A stretch of DNA of 44,193 bases from Octopus sinensis (GCF_006345805.1 NW_021834923.1:1-44193); one strand, 5' to 3'. Counted from the first letter of the stretch, positions 2,648 to 38,700 are shown. Notes: generated by a model from the sequence alone, not told the origin. Numbers and translations are program-made.

Positions 2648-2719
2648 AAATCTGAGAAATAATGAAATCCAGAAAATTGATGTACGAACCTTCCAGGATC
2701 TTACCAATTTAAAGGAATT
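2648..2719 (+). CDS. LRR exon 1: [23 protein letters not shown](L)
   Basis: ttacag / 72 nt / gtaagt, phase 2-2, LRR consensus. Confidence 0.9.
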
Positions 2720-5700
2720 GTAAGTTGGATCACTCTTGTTAATGCTATTTCATTGACGATATTCGCTTGTATTTCTAAATAGTAAAAGTCTTCCTTCCCT
2801 CATCACTCTCTTTTTGCTACTCTTTGTTTCTATGTAAGAGTGTGTAAGATGTTGTGTGTATCTCTTTCTGCAACATCTAGTCCTTGTCTTTCTCTTAATT
2901 TCACCCTCTACTTTTCTTTCTGCTACATGTTCTCCCCTACTGCTTCCTCATTTTAGACCTTTCCTTCCTCCCCTTCTTCTCTTCCTCCTTCATATGTACA
3001 ACAACAACAACAACTACTACTACTACTACTACTACTACTACTACTACTACTACTACTACTACCGCATTCTCTACTTTTTCCCTTCAAAATTTTCTTGTTT
3101 ATTTCATATTCTGTCTATTTCATATTTACTCTTTACTCTTTTACTTGTTTCAGTCATTTGACTGCGGCCATGCTGGAGCACCGCCTTTAATCGAGCAACT
3201 CGACCCCGGGACTTATTCTTTTGTAAGCCCAGTACTTATTCAATCGGTCTCTTTTGCCGAACCGCTAAGTGACGGGGACGTAAAAACACCAGCATCGGTT
3301 GTCAAGCAATGCTAGGGAGACAAACACAGACACACAAACATATACACACACATACATACATACATATATATATATATATATATATATATATATATAGATA
3401 GATAGATACGACAAGCTTCTTTCAGCTACTTACCACACAGCCACTCCTGTGCCCATTATATATAAAAAAAATTGTTTAGCCATAATATTTAATATTTAGT
3501 ATTGTATCACTTATCAGCCCTTAATATTCTTACAATTCTCCCAAACTCACCTTTATGTTACAGAGATCTGAATAAGAATGAAATCAAGGAGATTGATAAA
3601 CACACCTTTGAAAGCCTCGCCAACTTAGAGAAATTGTAAGTTCGTTTATTCTTGCTCATATTATTTCATTAACCAAAGTTTTCCCAAATTGTCTTCCTCA
3701 CTTTCTCTCTGTCTCTCCTCTCATTCTTTCACTGCTTATCCTCTCCCCTTCTGTTTCTTCATCTTCAACTTTTACTACTAACTACTACTACTACTACTAC
3801 TACTACTACTACTACTACTACTGCTGCTGCTGCTGCTGCTGCTGCTGCTGCCTCCTTTTTTTAAGAAGGCATTTGTAAAGAAATTATTATTATCATTACT
3901 TCCGTTGTCATTGTTGTCGTCATCATCCTAACCATCATCTTGACTCAGGATCCGTCTTATTCCTGGAAGAGTAAATATGAATAGCGGTTTATTCTCTGTA
4001 ACCTTAGATAGCCACATGATTTTGGGAAGCCATCAAGTGCTCAAAGCCCTTCTGATGATCTTGCTTACTCGTAAGAGGAAGACACTCTGCAGAAGCTCTA
4101 CAGGACCTTCCATTTCATTCTCTTTTATCCGTTGATCTAATTCCATTACTCACAGTCTCTAATGAACCAATTTTCAGAAGTAAGACTTTTACAGTTTTCA
4201 TGTTTCGAATCCTCGAAATCGTAAAATTTTAAACTTTGTCAAAATGAGTGTTTGGAACAAGAAGTACATGGGACAATCTTCGAGTAAAAAGAGTACTGGA
4301 GTCGTATCTGTTGAATGAGAATCATGGAGACCCCTGTGGGAATGGAGGAATGGACTAGCCGAACTCATATAAAGAGTAGTGTATTGGTTGAGAGAGGCGG
4401 AGGTTGTAGGAGTCGTTGAGAATTCGTTGAAGTCATTGGGATCGTTGAGAGGTTGTATTTATTGGAGTATCGTGCTTAGAGGAATAATTTGGAGTACGTC
4501 GTGTGAAGGCAGCTGTATCTATTCCCGCTTCCGGAAATTTGTATATCCAAAGTGCAGAAGGATATAAAAGTAAGCATACTTAGGCGCAGGAGTGGCTGTG
4601 TGGTAAATAGCTTGCTAACCAACCACATGGTTCCGGGTTCAGTCCCACTGCGTGGCATCTTGGGCAAGTGTCTTCTGCTATAGCCCCGGGCCGACCAATG
4701 CCTTGTGAGTGGATTTGGTAGACGGAAACTGAAAGAAGCCCCTCGTATATATGTATATATATATATGTATGTGTGTGTGTGTTTGTGTGTCTGTGTTTGT
4801 CCCCCTAGCATTGCTTGACAACTGATGCTGGTGTGTTTACGTCCCCAACACTTAGCGGTTCGGCAAAAGAGACCGATAGAATAAGTACTGGGCTTACAAA
4901 GAATAAGTCCCGGGGTCGATTTGCTCGACTAAAGGCGGTGCTCCAGCATGGCCGCAGTCAAATGACTGAAACAAGTAAAAGGGTAAAAGAGTATACTCCT
5001 ATGATTTCACCTGCTGTCGTCACAATCCTAGCATCAGATGGACATGATGGACCAGTCATTATGCAAATATCATTTCATTGTCTATCACTGTAATATCTGA
5101 GTGGTTATGTTCCATCTTATTTGTTTGAATGGGAAAATCTCACAAAACAATGCATGCTTACTTTTATATCCTTCTGCACTTTGGATATACAAATTTCCGG
5201 AAGCGGGAATAGATACTCCAAATTATTCCTCTAAGCACGATACTCCAATAAATACAACCTCTCAACGATCCCAATGACTTCAACGAATTCTCAACGAGTC
5301 CTAAAACCTCCGCCTCCCTCAACCAATACACTACTCTTTATATGTGTTCGGCTAGTCCATTCCTCCATTCCCACAGGGGTCTCCATGATTCTCATTCAAC
5401 AGATACGACTCCAGTACTCTTTTTACTCGAAGATTGTCCCATGTACTTCCTGTTCCAAACACTCATTTCGACAAAGTTTCTCGTCTAAATTTCCACAACT
5501 TGGTCATGCCTCCCTTTCTTTCGTCCTCCCGGAGCCAACTCGAGATTTCCCCAGAAATACTGACCATTCCATTGAAGCAACATCAGATATGGCCATAAAG
5601 GACAAAATAAACAAAAGTTGTAGGTTCAAAGACTTTGTAATTCTCTGAAATTGAAAGAATTTAGAAGTATCCGGATCTAACTTGAGAGGTGAGGAGACTG

Positions 5701-35700: not shown

Positions 35701-38700
35701 CAGAAATCTAAGTCATAATGGTATCATGAGTATTGAAGAAGGAATCTTCGAAAATCTTCCTAATTTACGGAAACTGTAAGTTGGACAAGCATTTGTAAAA
35801 CTATTTCGTTAATGATGTATTTCTAAATATTCAGTTACTTACTTTCTCTTTCTGTCACTTGTCTTCTATTTGTCTATGTATACATCTTATTCTATGCATA
35901 AACACCTTCATCTACCCAGATTCTACATAAATATGTGGATGAAAGCGTATATTTGTGCAACTACTGAATTTAGGCATTCTTCTTCTTCTTCTTCTTCTTC
36001 TTCTTCCTCTTATTCTCCTCCACCTTCTTCTTCCTCTTCTTCTCCTCCACCTTCTTCTTCCTCTTCCTCTTCTTCTTCTCCTCCACCTTCTTCCTCTTCT
36101 TCTTCTCCTCCACCTTCTTCTTCCTCTTCCTTTTCATTTCTTTCAACTATTCCAACATCGTTCTACTCACCATCGTATCTTTCTAATTCTCATTTTCCAT
36201 TTTGTCAACTTCTTTCACTAACCTTTTAGTTCTTTACTTCTTCCATCGTTTCTAGGACAATTCTTATCTCACTTCTTCACAACCACCGAAATCACCAAAA
36301 CTACCACCACCACCACCACCAACAACAACAACTTCTTTTTCTTTTCTCTTGTTCTTCTTGACACTCCTCCAATTCATTTTTATTGTTTCTGCTTTTTTAG
36401 TCCACATCCTCCTTTGAATAGTTTTTCATGATAAACTGGTTCGTATTTTCTTTAAAACTTTGTTGCAATCTTCCATTCCCCTTTCATCTAAGTTCCCGAG
36501 TCTCTCACCATCGTTTAACTCAATCAGTTCCTTGGAATGACCTAGAACATCGGAGTGTGTTATCACAGATTTTCTGGGAAAATGTCGCTGCTTATTACAT
36601 CACACCTAAAGTATACCAACAACACTACTACTCAAATGTTACACGTCACAGCAATATGCGTGAGTCTAGACACAAGAAAATAAGAACAATTTTCTACACC
36701 AGACATATCTTGTCTGTCCAGACATACCTTGCCTCATTAACAGATATTGTTTCAAAAATACTGTATGTTAAATAATCTACATTATAAAAAATTACAGATG
36801 ACTCGTTCAATCAGAGAAAAATCTACAAGTCTCAAAATAATTCAGAGTTTGTCAATTTTAAAAGCTATGGGACATACAGTGATACGGGACATACAGGACA
36901 TACAGTGCTTGACGGATAGGTGATATTTTCAGGACTACACACATGCATGTTCGCATTGAACCTTCTATCAATATTTGTCAGAATTCAAAATTTTATGTCA
37001 ATCGAAATTGTTTATAATATTTAATAGATGAAATTTTATATTAATTTTATGTTAATTTTATGTTAATCGAAATTGTTTATAATATTTAATACATGAAATT
37101 TTATATTAATTTTATGTTAATTTTATGTTAATCGAAATTGTTTATATTTAATACATGAAATTTTATGTTAATTTTATGTTAATCGAAATTGTTTATAATA
37201 TTTAATACATGAAATTTTATATTAATTTTATGTTAATCGAAATTATTTATAATATTTAATACATGAACACAAATCTGCTCTAACAACTTCTGAATTCGCT
37301 TTCCCTTTACAGGGACCTGAGACATAATAATATCACGAACTTTAGAGAAGCAATCTTCCAGAACATTAACTATTTGGAGGAAATGTAAGTCGGCTCAGTC
37401 TTGTTCTTACTATTTCATTGACTATATTTCTTAAACATCAAATGTCTTTTTCACTCTCTTTATTCATTATCTTCCACACGCTTCTTATTCTTTCTTCGAT
37501 TTTTATCTTCCTAATTCGTGGTTATCCTTGCATCCCTTTCCAGTTGAGCTATCCTAACCCTAACCCTAACCCTAATCTTGCGGGTTCTTGGGTGCTCGTG
37601 TCATGTAAACGCACCCGTAGCAGTGCTACGTAAAAGTACCCAGTACACTCTGCAATGTGGTTGGTATTAGGAAGGGCATCCAGCTGTAGAAATCATGCCA
37701 AAACACACATGGAACCTGGGCAGCTCCTGTCAAACCGTCTAACCCATGCCAGCATGGAAAACGGATGTTAAACGATGATGATGTTTAACATTGTAAGAAA
37801 TAGCAATTTAGAACCAAAGACAAAAAGGTTTTCATACACAGTGTTATTAAATGAAAGTATTTCGGGAGTAAATAAAAAGGAAAATATAAACTCCGGATTT
37901 AAACTTAGAGTGAAATAAAACCACATCTTTAATCTGGTGTTAGTATGAAAGTTTCGATGAAGATGGTGAACTGGCAGAATCGTTAGCACGCCGGGCAAAA
38001 GTGCTTAGTGGCTTTTCGTCTGTCTCAACATTCAGAGTTCAAATTCCACTCAGGACGACATTGCCTTTTATTCATTCGGGGTCGATAAAATAAGAACCAC
38101 TTGAGTACTGGGATTGATGTAATCGACTTGCCCTTCCCAGAATTGCTACCCTTGTGCCAAAATTTGAAATCAAAAAAGTTTTGATGGATCATTTTGAAAG
38201 GTTTGTCAATTGTATTTATCAGTCAAAATTGCAATCTTAAATATACATCGCGTGTTACCCAGCAGCAACACACAAATCAGTCATAACTACTAAGTTTCTC
38301 AACAACACTTACTGTCTCGTCAGTTTGGCAACTATATACAGTATGCAAACTACAGCTAGACTGTAATCTATAGCAAGTGTGTCATCTGCATCTAGTGCAT
38401 CGTATATATATATATATTCGATGTCATTTATATGTAGTATATTAGCTCTGCCTAGTATGTCTCTCTATATTTGTATGTCAGATATACCAAACATGTCATC
38501 TATATTTCGTATGCCATCAATATCAAGTACAACATCTATATCTGGTATATCATCTATATCTAGTATGCCATCTCTGTCTAATATGTCTGCCTATATTTTA
38601 TGTCATCAATATGTCGTATGTCATCTATATCTGGTATGTCTTCCATATCTAGTATGACACATCGTATGTCATCAATATCAAATGCCATATATATCTGGTA

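What the first reader, a model, noticed from the sequence alone, without database searches (positions are those of the whole stretch)
2648..37384. Tandem array of 22 interchangeable single-LRR exons: candidate combinatorial LRR recognition system in a cephalopod-like genome
Seen: 21 exons of exactly 72 nt and one of 48 nt, all phase 2-2 with strong splice sites, each a paralogous LRR. The exons come from internal tandem duplication, because their introns are homologous too, and the array is still growing. Any subset can be skipped in frame. Established: somatic or splice-based diversification of repeat receptors exists in lamprey VLRs (LRR cassettes, by gene conversion) and arthropod Dscam (Ig exons, by splicing). 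Inference: this locus could be a splice-diversified or rapidly haplotype-variable LRR receptor or opsonin. Caveat: 72-nt single-LRR exons are also the normal constitutive architecture of SLIT and RXFP/LGR genes.
Basis: partly seen in the sequence, partly recalled or inferred. Interest (0 to 1): 0.9.

Follow-up and report, generated by a model that had tools for sequence, protein, structure and literature searches.

The report
Octopus one-LRR-per-exon receptor gene array
This is the leucine-rich-repeat part of an unannotated octopus gene from a lineage-specific family of adhesion-receptor-like proteins; each repeat sits in its own 72-base exon, a layout already known from hormone-receptor, Slit and brown-alga genes, which allows repeats to be skipped in frame but does not show that they are.

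Summary
The + strand carries 21 exons of exactly 72 nt, one 48-nt exon and a cysteine cap exon. All introns are phase 2, with ACAG-type acceptors and GTAAGT donors. The reading frame is open in all 21 exons and closed in the other two frames.

The exons encode at least 21 consecutive 24-residue LRRs. The closest proteins, only 40-45% identical, are Octopus proteins of a family that reads LRRNT, LRRs, an "MCGC" cap, a Ly6/uPAR-like domain and then GAIN/GPS-7TM. RefSeq names them "adhesion GPCR G6-like", "slit-like" or "IGFALS-like". An O. bimaculoides paralog has the same 72-nt phase-2 exons and the same intron-flank consensus.

The array is mostly old (dS about 0.9 between exons). Purifying selection is strong at core positions (dN/dS 0.10) and roughly neutral at concave positions (1.15). 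Only two duplications are recent.

Annotated paralogs have isoforms that differ by exact 24-residue steps, so in-frame skipping of single LRR exons is plausible in this family. Some of those models are artefacts. No RNA evidence exists for this locus, and nothing points to an immune role.

The architecture has clear precedents: LH receptor, Slit, NLRP3 and brown-alga ROCO genes. Verdict: a new member of a known kind, of moderate interest.

The parts
2648..2719 (+). LRR exon 1 in the window (72 nt, phase 2/2): [23 protein letters not shown]. It has an acceptor, so the gene starts upstream of the window.
3564..3635 (+). LRR exon 2 (72 nt): [23 protein letters not shown]
6187..6258 (+). LRR exon 3 (72 nt): [23 protein letters not shown]
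6705..6776 (+). LRR exon 4 (72 nt): [23 protein letters not shown]
9221..9292 (+). LRR exon 5 (72 nt): [23 protein letters not shown]
10105..10176 (+). LRR exon 6 (72 nt): [23 protein letters not shown]
11615..11686 (+). LRR exon 7 (72 nt): [23 protein letters not shown]. It is the most divergent copy by profile score.
14536..14607 (+). LRR exon 8 (72 nt): [23 protein letters not shown]. It is the older or younger twin of exon 9.
16467..16538 (+). LRR exon 9 (72 nt): [23 protein letters not shown]. It differs from exon 8 at 3 of 72 bases, all amino-acid changing.
17111..17182 (+). LRR exon 10 (72 nt): [23 protein letters not shown]
21403..21474 (+). LRR exon 11 (72 nt): [23 protein letters not shown]
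23699..23770 (+). LRR exon 12 (72 nt): [23 protein letters not shown]
24337..24408 (+). LRR exon 13 (72 nt): [23 protein letters not shown]
25347..25418 (+). LRR exon 14 (72 nt): [23 protein letters not shown]
26708..26779 (+). LRR exon 15 (72 nt): [23 protein letters not shown]. It lacks the conserved Phe.
28424..28495 (+). LRR exon 16 (72 nt): [23 protein letters not shown]
32063..32134 (+). LRR exon 17 (72 nt; the only GTAAGC donor): [23 protein letters not shown]. It is followed by a 110-nt intron.
32245..32316 (+). LRR exon 18 (72 nt): [23 protein letters not shown]. It is the parent of the 48-nt exon.
32822..32869 (+). 48-nt exon (phase 2/2, ttacag|..|gtaagt): [15 protein letters not shown]. 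It is a recent partial copy of exon 18 that lacks the first 24 nt, which encode the xLxxNxIx beta-strand half. If included it would insert a 16-residue half-repeat, so it is probably a skipped or relic exon.
34551..34622 (+). LRR exon 19 (72 nt): [23 protein letters not shown]
35704..35775 (+). LRR exon 20 (72 nt): [23 protein letters not shown]
37313..37384 (+). LRR exon 21 (72 nt): [23 protein letters not shown]
38814..38980 (+). C-terminal cap (LRRCT-like) exon, 167 nt, phase 2 in and phase 1 out: [56 protein letters not shown]. The four Cys are the only ones in the product. The donor AAAA|gttagt is the same as the annotated donor of the O. bimaculoides paralog. If the donor is not used, the frame stops at TAG 38983-38985.
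13791..16641 (+). Recent tandem duplication: 13791-14707 and 15718-16641, period about 1.93 kb, 96-97% identical (exon 3/72 and intron 25/843 mismatches). It carries exons 8 and 9.

Best explanation
The window holds most of the extracellular LRR-coding region of a gene that has no counterpart in the protein database I searched. The gene belongs to an Octopus-lineage family of LRR proteins. The full architecture of that family is signal peptide, LRRNT, N x 24-residue LRR, a family-specific four-Cys cap (..MCGC..C..C), often a Ly6/uPAR-like domain, SEA/HRM-like modules and a GAIN/GPS-7TM (adhesion GPCR) end.

The array was built by repeated tandem duplication of one unit. The unit is a 72-nt phase-2 exon plus roughly 60-80 nt of upstream and about 40 nt of downstream intron. 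Most of the duplication happened long ago inside this gene, with two recent additions.

The product is a long curved LRR solenoid of at least 21 repeats closed by the cap. The core Leu/Asn/Ile/Phe positions are held by purifying selection. The concave-face x positions have diverged freely, so each repeat contributes a different patch to one extended ligand-binding surface.

Most exons are probably included constitutively. Because every exon is symmetric, occasional or regulated skipping of single LRR exons can shorten the solenoid without breaking the frame, as annotated for paralogs.

Shown: the exon anatomy, the repeat type, the family relationship, the duplication history and the selection pattern. 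Inferred: the missing 5' (LRRNT) and 3' (uPAR/GAIN/7TM) exons, the extracellular location, ligand binding, and any splicing behaviour of this locus.
For: The conceptual product matches Pfam LRR_8 at E=2.5e-147. Its closest solved relatives are IGFALS, LRRC15, TLR13, LRIG1, TLR3 and LGR4.

The best database proteins are Octopus family members at 40-45% identity. The cap exon matches only that family (E 1e-12 to 1e-5). The closest cap, 46% identical, is in P0157, an O. vulgaris protein with LRR_8, GPS and 7tm_2. LRR plus GPS plus 7tm_2 gene models lie at or beside paralog loci.

The O. bimaculoides paralog locus L002 has 13 exons of 72 nt and one of 66 nt in the same phase. Its flank consensus (gtaagttggatcagtcttgctgatactattt) is the same, and so is its gttagt donor after the cap. 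Three adjacent genes in L004 all carry such arrays.

Selection pattern: dS 0.89; dN/dS 0.10 at core positions, 0.64 at other positions and 1.15 at concave x positions; proximal flanks JC 0.68-0.84. Within-gene exon identity exceeds between-gene identity. The product has 19 N-glycosylation sequons against 12 +/- 3 expected, and no Cys outside the cap.

Published context: an octopus adhesion-GPCR expansion (group 3), in which 5 of 22 sequences carry LRRs, is expressed in axial nerve cord, suckers and skin (PMC6408891).
Against: No ortholog or transcript-derived protein above 45% identity was found, although three annotated Octopus genomes are in the database. The gene may therefore be unexpressed, unannotated or from another octopod. 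No LRRNT exon lies in 1-2647, and no uPAR, SEA, GAIN or 7TM exon lies in the 5.2 kb after the cap, so the adhesion-GPCR end is inferred from relatives only. Some family members are annotated as LRR-only or LRR-uPAR products. An in-frame TAG follows the cap if the donor is not used. Exons 15 and 16 and the 48-nt exon depart from the consensus.
Confidence: 0.7

Rival explanations
1. This is a combinatorial splice-diversified recognition receptor. The 22 symmetric exons would be cassettes included or skipped in many combinations, per cell or per challenge. That would give a large repertoire of LRR surfaces for immune recognition, or for neuronal or sensory cell-surface identity.
For: All exons are the same phase and size. 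Paralogs are annotated with isoform ladders in exact 24-residue steps. O. bimaculoides X2, X3 and X4 each skip a different whole exon at exact exon borders. O. sinensis has 13 isoforms of 409/385/361/337 aa and a second gene with 525/501/477 aa. The independent O. vulgaris annotation has 489/465/441 aa and two alternative first LRRs. In L003, cassette and constant exons have equally good splice sites, so strong sites do not exclude skipping. Concave positions evolve at or slightly above the neutral rate. Precedents exist for alternative splicing of LRR exons: NLRP3 (PMC6642158) and brown-alga ROCO genes with 72-bp phase-2 LRR exons (PMC11378527).
Against: There is no RNA evidence for this locus. 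Each annotated ladder has 3-13 forms, not thousands, and mostly involves a few N-terminal exons. Some O. sinensis models are chimeric workarounds for a 73-nt exon with an A8 run. Near-identical repeats also invite reverse-transcriptase template switching and read mis-mapping. There is no docking or selector arrangement, and the only candidate intronic hairpin is weak. The exons are old and individually distinct, as expected for a fixed binding surface. The published expression of the octopus adhesion-GPCR expansion is neural, sucker and skin, not haemocyte (PMC6408891).
Confidence: 0.15
2. This is a secreted LRR-only protein. The transcript would end just after the cap, at TAG 38983-38985 with an ATTAAA about 65 nt downstream, giving a soluble horseshoe with no uPAR, GAIN or 7TM part, comparable to IGFALS or LRR-only opsonins.
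For: An in-frame stop follows immediately if the gttagt donor is unused. No downstream family exon was found in 5.2 kb. Several relatives are annotated as products without a 7TM part. The top solved match is IGFALS.
Against: The same gttagt donor at the same codon is used in the annotated O. bimaculoides paralog. ATTAAA is expected by chance in 34% GC DNA. Introns of 2-4 kb and more are common here, so 5.2 kb without an exon says little.
Confidence: 0.1
3. This is a decaying or non-functional array: a duplicated fragment of a family gene that is no longer expressed as a protein.
For: No matching protein or transcript is in the databases. There is no 5' exon in the window. The 48-nt exon is truncated, and exons 15 and 16 are off-consensus.
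Against: The LRR frame has 483 codons without a stop, while both other frames are closed. All 44 splice sites are intact. dN/dS is 0.10 at core positions despite dS of about 0.9. These are signatures of long-term purifying selection.
Confidence: 0.05

Closest known systems
Octopus LRR / adhesion-GPCR-like family (RefSeq 'adhesion G-protein coupled receptor G6-like', 'slit homolog-like', 'IGFALS-like', 'chaoptin', 'LRRC15-like'). It is probably part of the octopus 'group 3' adhesion-GPCR expansion of Ritschard et al. 2019 (PMC6408891), although I did not map it to that group.
   Same: It has the same 24-residue LRR type, the same MCGC..C..C cap and the same 72-nt phase-2 exons. The intron-flank consensus and the donor after the cap also match.
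   Different: It is only 40-45% identical to any member. It has more consecutive LRRs in the window (at least 21) than the paralogs inspected, which have about 9-14. Its LRRNT, uPAR, GAIN and 7TM parts are not in the window.
Glycoprotein-hormone and relaxin/LGR receptor genes (LHCGR, FSHR, TSHR, LGR4-6, RXFP1/2)
   Same: Each LRR has its own exon of about 72 nt and all introns are phase 2. The domain is explained by duplication of a prototype exon (Koo 1991, as cited in PMC11378527). The LRR ectodomain sits in front of a 7TM receptor. LGR4/5 are among the closest solved structures.
   Different: Those are rhodopsin-type 7TM receptors with 9-17 LRRs and standard caps. Relatives of this gene carry GPS plus secretin/adhesion-type 7TM.
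SLIT genes
   Same: They have modular single-LRR exons, with in-frame alternative splicing proposed from the gene structure (Little et al. 2002, cited in PMC6642158).
   Different: SLIT has four separately capped LRR domains plus EGF, laminin-G and cystine-knot domains. This gene has one long uninterrupted array with a different cap.
Brown-alga LRR-ROCO genes (Ectocarpus, Saccharina)
   Same: Each exon is 72 bp, in phase 2, and encodes one LRR. They show exon shuffling, several splice variants and positively selected concave sites, and have been proposed as a diversified immune repertoire (PMC11378527).
   Different: They are intracellular ROC-COR GTPases in a different kingdom. The convergence is in exon design, not homology of the genes.
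NLRP3 and other NLRs
   Same: They show strict exonic modularity of LRRs and stochastic skipping of one LRR exon with a functional effect (PMC6642158).
   Different: They have ribonuclease-inhibitor-type LRRs with two repeats per 171-nt exon, are cytosolic sensors, and produce two main isoforms.
Lamprey VLR and arthropod Dscam
   Same: VLRs are a variable LRR-module recognition system. Dscam has tandem arrays of paralogous exons that give isoform diversity.
   Different: VLR diversity is somatic DNA assembly from flanking cassettes, not splicing of an intact gene. Dscam uses mutually exclusive choice with docking and selector RNA pairing among Ig exons. Neither mechanism has any signature here.

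Membership tests
Typical 24-residue extracellular LRR domain | Repeats matching LxxLxLxxNxIxxIxxxxFxxLxx, recognised by LRR profiles | tested here: met
   All 21 units fit the pattern: L2 and N5 are invariant, and I7, I10 and F15 are present in 20 of 21. Pfam LRR_8 E=2.5e-147 with 12 stretches.
Typical 24-residue extracellular LRR domain | Cysteine-containing C-terminal cap | tested here: inconclusive
   A four-Cys cap exon is present. It does not match Pfam LRRCT and matches only the Octopus family cap.
Typical 24-residue extracellular LRR domain | N-terminal cap (LRRNT) and signal peptide | tested here: not met
   Neither was found in 1-2647. The first exon has an acceptor, so they are expected upstream of the window.
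Octopus LRR / adhesion-GPCR-like family | Family-specific cap ..(M)CGC..L.A.V..........V.V...C......G.......L.Y..C | tested here: met
   The invariant columns C, G, C, L, A, V, V, V, C, G, L, Y, C are shared with three members. BLASTP E values run from 1e-12 to 1e-5 against more than 60 Octopus proteins.
Octopus LRR / adhesion-GPCR-like family | One LRR per 72-nt phase-2 exon with the shared flank consensus | tested here: met
   The window profile, flanks included, hits 14 exons in L002, 23 in L004 and 7 in L005 over nearly its full length. The consensus flanks are nearly identical.
Octopus LRR / adhesion-GPCR-like family | Ly6/uPAR-like, SEA/HRM, GAIN/GPS and 7tm_2 parts downstream | tested here: not met
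   No such exon lies in 38981-44193. This may simply be because the window ends too early, since the conserved donor after the cap argues that the gene continues.
Dscam-type mutually exclusive exon cluster | A docking site plus selector sequences in each variable intron, with one exon chosen per cluster | tested here: not met
   No conserved intronic element was found beyond the proximal flanks. The only candidate hairpin is local and weak. Exons encode consecutive repeats of one solenoid.
Lamprey VLR-type assembly locus | An incomplete germline gene flanked by banks of partial LRR cassettes lacking splice sites, on both strands | tested here: not met
   All 22 units are on one strand, each with intact AG and GT sites in one frame. 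No extra LRR fragments were found.
Splice-diversified LRR receptor (functional class) | Many exon combinations observed in RNA from this locus | not testable with these tools
   No RNA data are available. The only evidence is annotated isoform ladders in paralogs, and these are partly artefactual.

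The most novel reading that the evidence does not exclude
Octopuses may use cassette splicing of single-LRR exons across a whole lineage-specific family of LRR-adhesion-GPCR genes. This would give cells different receptor ectodomains, as a surface-identity or recognition code in the peripheral nervous system, suckers, skin or haemocytes. 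It would play a role like Dscam in arthropods or clustered protocadherins, but with LRR modules. With 22 symmetric exons this locus would be the largest substrate seen so far for such a code. The annotated 24-residue isoform ladders in three Octopus species would be its first trace. I found no paper describing it in four full-text literature searches for octopus or cephalopod LRR and adhesion-GPCR work or in a 2026 review of immune diversification.
Probability: 0.12. Interest if true: 0.8.

Novelty: new member of a known kind. Interest (0 to 1): 0.4.

Why it matters
If the plain reading holds, the locus adds one unusually long member (at least 21 LRRs) to an octopus-specific receptor family that is poorly annotated. 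It shows how such ectodomains grow, by duplicating an exon-plus-flank unit. It also shows that gene models for these arrays are unreliable: exons are missing, and some isoforms are chimeric.

The family deserves a look because three independent annotations show isoforms that differ by whole LRRs. If direct RNA sequencing confirms this, it would be a documented case in an animal of tuning a receptor's binding surface by repeat-number splicing. It would occur in a lineage known for expanded cell-surface recognition genes. That question can be tested with existing octopus tissues and long-read RNA methods.

Tried and rejected
- Look-ups of isoforms X4 and X6 failed because only the longest product of a gene is indexed. 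The O. sinensis LRRC15-like gene spans 229 kb, so no DNA was returned.
- The top E-value hit P0001 (LRR plus 7tm_1, from a metagenome contig and intronless) is a generic LRR match at 34-36% identity. I rejected it as a guide to family.
- I looked for the window itself in O. bimaculoides, O. sinensis and O. vulgaris family loci. Only shared transposable elements matched, so the source species remains unknown beyond 'octopod'.
- I tested whether the conserved intron flanks are special regulatory elements. Once the splice consensus is removed, they are about as conserved as synonymous sites, so inheritance from the duplication unit is enough to explain them.
- A small ATCAG-N5-CTGAT hairpin after the donor is intact in about half of 34 copies, with one compensatory change. 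That is too weak to claim.
- Strong positive selection at concave positions is not supported. dN/dS is 1.15 with dS near saturation.
- Rfam and tRNA scans found nothing.
- No extra or degenerate LRR exons lie in the long introns or on the - strand.

Full report
**What is in the sequence.** The window is AT-rich (34-41% GC) and full of microsatellites and SINE-like copies. On the + strand there are 21 exons of exactly 72 nt and one of 48 nt between 2648 and 37384. A profile built from the 21 exons with 30 nt of upstream and 20 nt of downstream flank finds these 22 sites and nothing else of note on either strand (E 2e-29 to 3e-11; the next hit has E 0.1). My first coordinate for the short exon was off by one; the correct span is 32822-32869.

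Each exon starts with the third base of a codon and ends with the first two bases of a Leu/Ile codon, so all introns are phase 2. The LRR frame is open in 21 of 21 exons. The other two frames carry stops in 21 and 20 of 21. Donors are GTAAGT in 21 exons and GTAAGC in one. Acceptors are ACAG in 17, TCAG in 2, ATAG in 2 and CCAG in 1. The last two exonic bases are TT or CT, fixed by the Leu codon, so the perfect intronic half of the donor probably compensates for a poor exonic half.

A further exon at 38814-38980 encodes a four-Cys cap, [14 protein letters not shown]...C...C. No LRRNT exon lies in 1-2647 and no further family exon lies in 38981-44193. The gene is therefore cut at its 5' end by the window and probably at its 3' end too.

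**What it encodes.** Spliced together, the 21 exons give 503 residues of regular 24-residue repeats with the pattern xLxxNxIxxIxxGTFxxLxxLxxL. Leu2 and Asn5 are invariant, and Ile7, Ile10 and Phe15 are present in 20 of 21 units. Pfam LRR_8 matches at E=2.5e-147. The closest solved proteins are IGFALS, LRRC15, TLR13, LRIG1, TLR3 and LGR4/5. The product has 19 N-glycosylation sequons against 12 +/- 3 expected from its composition. Its only cysteines are the four in the cap. Both facts fit an extracellular domain.

**Which family.** A search of 5.8 billion proteins found nothing above 45% identity. The best animal hits with family-specific features are all from Octopus: XP_014776846 'IGFALS', 'chaoptin' and 'slit homolog 3-like' isoforms, and 'LRRC15-like'. 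These proteins share a signal peptide, LRRNT, LRRs, the same MCGC cap, and then a Ly6/uPAR-like Cys-rich domain and SEA/HRM-like modules.

A second search from one member recovered dozens of O. sinensis, O. vulgaris and O. bimaculoides proteins. Many are named 'adhesion G-protein coupled receptor G6-like', and some carry GPS and 7tm_2. The window's cap is closest (46%) to that of P0157, which has LRR_8, GPS and 7tm_2 by Pfam. At paralog loci an LRR plus GPS plus 7tm_2 model lies on the opposite strand, or a GPS plus 7tm_2 model overlaps the LRR gene on the same strand.

Ritschard et al. 2019 described an octopus-enriched 'group 3' adhesion-GPCR expansion. In it, 5 of 22 sequences have LRRs, the genes are co-localised, and expression is mainly in axial nerve cord, suckers and skin (PMC6408891). 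I did not map this family onto that group, but it is the most likely published counterpart. I therefore file the window gene as a divergent member of this family. Its uPAR, GAIN and 7TM parts are inferred, not seen.

The window shares repeat families with O. bimaculoides and O. vulgaris at 85-95% identity. This supports an octopod origin. The window itself was not in any locus I could fetch.

**The exon design is family-wide.** The O. bimaculoides paralog (L002, CM046629.1:745661-781358) has 13 exons of 72 nt and one of 66 nt, all in the same phase. The window's exon-plus-flank profile matches them over nearly its full length. The flank consensus is almost the same in the two genes: gtaagttggatcagtcttg(t/c)tgatactattt downstream and a ...tt(c/a)t(g/c)ttacag acceptor upstream. 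The unusual donor after the cap, AAA|gttagt, sits at the same codon in both genes and is used in the annotated mRNA of the paralog. This argues that the window gene also continues downstream. In L004, three adjacent genes all carry such arrays. In L005, five LRR exons lie upstream of the annotated start of P0157, so these arrays are under-annotated.

**History and selection.** Mean pairwise exon identity is 62%. Only exons 8 and 9 are close, at 96%. Exons resemble each other more within a gene (0.625; 0.64 in L002; 0.71 in L003) than between genes (0.545-0.575). There is a slight neighbour effect. The arrays therefore expanded or were homogenised inside each gene.

Self-comparison shows one recent tandem duplicon, 13791-14707 versus 15718-16641, with mismatches at 3 of 72 exon positions and 25 of 843 intron positions. 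The 48-nt exon is part of a recent copy of about 165 nt of the exon-18 unit. Exactly the first 24 exonic bases are deleted. It differs at 7 of 48 exonic positions, all amino-acid changing, but at only about 2 of 85 positions in the flanking intron.

All other long intron similarities are interspersed elements. Homology between introns is limited to the exon-proximal part. Ungapped JC distance is 0.68-0.84 within about 30 nt, 1.4-1.5 at 31-60 nt, and random at 200-300 nt.

Nei-Gojobori estimates over all exon pairs give dS 0.89. dN/dS is 0.10 at the core positions, 0.64 at convex and loop positions, and 1.15 at the concave x positions 22, 23, 1, 3, 4 and 6. In L002 the same three values are 0.09, 0.74 and 1.55. 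This is the usual LRR pattern: a conserved scaffold with a freely diverging binding face. With dS near saturation I do not claim positive selection. Once the splice consensus is removed, the proximal flanks are about as conserved as synonymous sites. They need no explanation beyond being part of the duplicated unit.

The O. bimaculoides gene has four RefSeq isoforms: X1 with 617 aa, and X2, X3 and X4 with 593 aa. Each of the shorter forms lacks a different single LRR, cut exactly at exon borders. They correspond to the exons at 14694, 18875 and 19605 in L002.

One O. sinensis gene has 13 isoforms of 409, 385, 361 and 337 aa, and another has forms of 525, 501 and 477 aa. On the genome, the first four or five LRR exons behave as cassettes and the last three are constant. 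Cassette and constant exons have equally good splice sites. An independent O. vulgaris annotation shows forms of 489, 465 and 441 aa and two alternative first repeats.

There are caveats. One O. sinensis exon is 73 nt long because of an A8 run. Several 'isoforms' join half of that exon to half of another inside a shared ATCAAAGAAGG repeat, which looks like a modelling workaround or a template-switch product. Near-identical repeats invite such artefacts. Skipping of single LRR exons is thus plausible in this family, and best supported in O. bimaculoides. A large combinatorial repertoire has not been shown anywhere, and nothing is known for the window's gene.

**Comparison with known systems.** One LRR per exon of about 72 nt with all introns in phase 2 was described for the LH receptor gene. 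It is also the design of brown-alga LRR-ROCO genes, where exon shuffling, splice variants and concave-site selection led to the same 'diversified immune receptor' proposal (PMC11378527). Slit genes were noted in 2002 for the same modularity and splicing potential. NLRP3 shows stochastic skipping of one LRR exon (PMC6642158).

Lamprey VLRs assemble by somatic gene conversion from cassette banks. Dscam uses mutually exclusive splicing with docking and selector pairing. Neither has a counterpart here. Four full-text searches and a 2026 review of immune diversification did not turn up a description of LRR-exon splicing in cephalopods.

**Verdict.** The most likely reading (about 0.7) is an ordinary, mostly constitutive LRR ectodomain of a new member of the octopus LRR/adhesion-GPCR-like family, grown by exon-unit duplication. 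Rival readings are a truly combinatorial splice-diversified receptor (about 0.15), a secreted LRR-only product ending after the cap (about 0.1), and a dead array (about 0.05). The last is disfavoured by open frames, intact splice sites and dN/dS of 0.10 at core positions. The immune or opsonin function is unsupported. Interest is moderate. The design is known, but the family-wide 24-residue isoform ladders are a concrete lead that can be tested cheaply.

Noticed in passing
window 32700-32950 compared with 32165-32360: The recent copy that carries the 48-nt exon differs from its parent at 7 of 48 exonic bases, all amino-acid changing (N>D, T>I, F>I, E>R, R>H). Only about 2 of 85 flanking intron bases differ, and the 40 nt after the donor are identical. 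This could be accelerated change or a small conversion tract in a half-repeat exon. It is unexplained.
   Followed up: partly
window, +10 to +24 after each donor (for example 24418-24432); L002 likewise: The conserved downstream flank contains a small inverted repeat, ATCAG-tcttg-(C/T)TGAT. It is intact (at least 4 of 5 pairs) in 17 of 34 copies from the two genes, with one compensatory variant (ATTAT..ATGAT at exon 18). The support is too weak to call it a structure.
   Followed up: yes
window 38981-39060: If the gttagt donor after the cap is not used, the frame ends at TAG 38983-38985, and an ATTAAA lies about 65 nt further on. Intron retention could therefore give a secreted LRR-only form.
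   Followed up: partly
window 148-579, 3124-3378, 11730-11958, 15195-15772, 19920-20337, 21862-22316, 32914-33341 (+ strand); 4476-4811 and 27763-28077 (ORFs on the - strand): About ten copies (listed at left) of one SINE-like element of about 400 nt (..gtcatttgactgcggccatgctggagcaccgcc..) sit in the introns at 80-95% identity. The same element occurs in O. bimaculoides and O. vulgaris loci at 85-93%. No tRNA-like or Rfam match was found.
   Followed up: partly
window 18243-18536 (+): An ORF fragment in intron 10 has the look of a mariner/Tc1 transposase C-terminus (..[26 protein letters not shown]..). I recognised it from memory and did not search with it.
   Followed up: no
window 2000-38000: The sense strand of the gene is rich in pyrimidines. 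GC skew is down to -0.59 and AT skew is negative. There are long (TCT)n, (CTA)n and (TCA)n runs in many introns, for example 27185-27652, 30760-31065 and 12641-12764. The skew changes sign beyond 40 kb, where a (GA)n block lies at 41674-42111.
   Followed up: no
L003 (O. sinensis VCDQ01004985.1) 11131-11203: One LRR exon is 73 nt because of an A8 run, which is either a frameshift or an assembly error. Several of the 13 RefSeq isoforms avoid it by joining half of this exon to half of another, so part of that isoform ladder is artefactual. An unused LRR exon also lies at 31667-31738.
   Followed up: yes
L005 (O. vulgaris OX597839.1) 698-9055; L002 6695-6766 compared with 10811-10882: Five LRR exons lie upstream of the annotated start of the LRR-GPS-7TM gene P0157. 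In L002 the first LRR exon is present twice with identical peptide. Gene models for these arrays appear incomplete.
   Followed up: no
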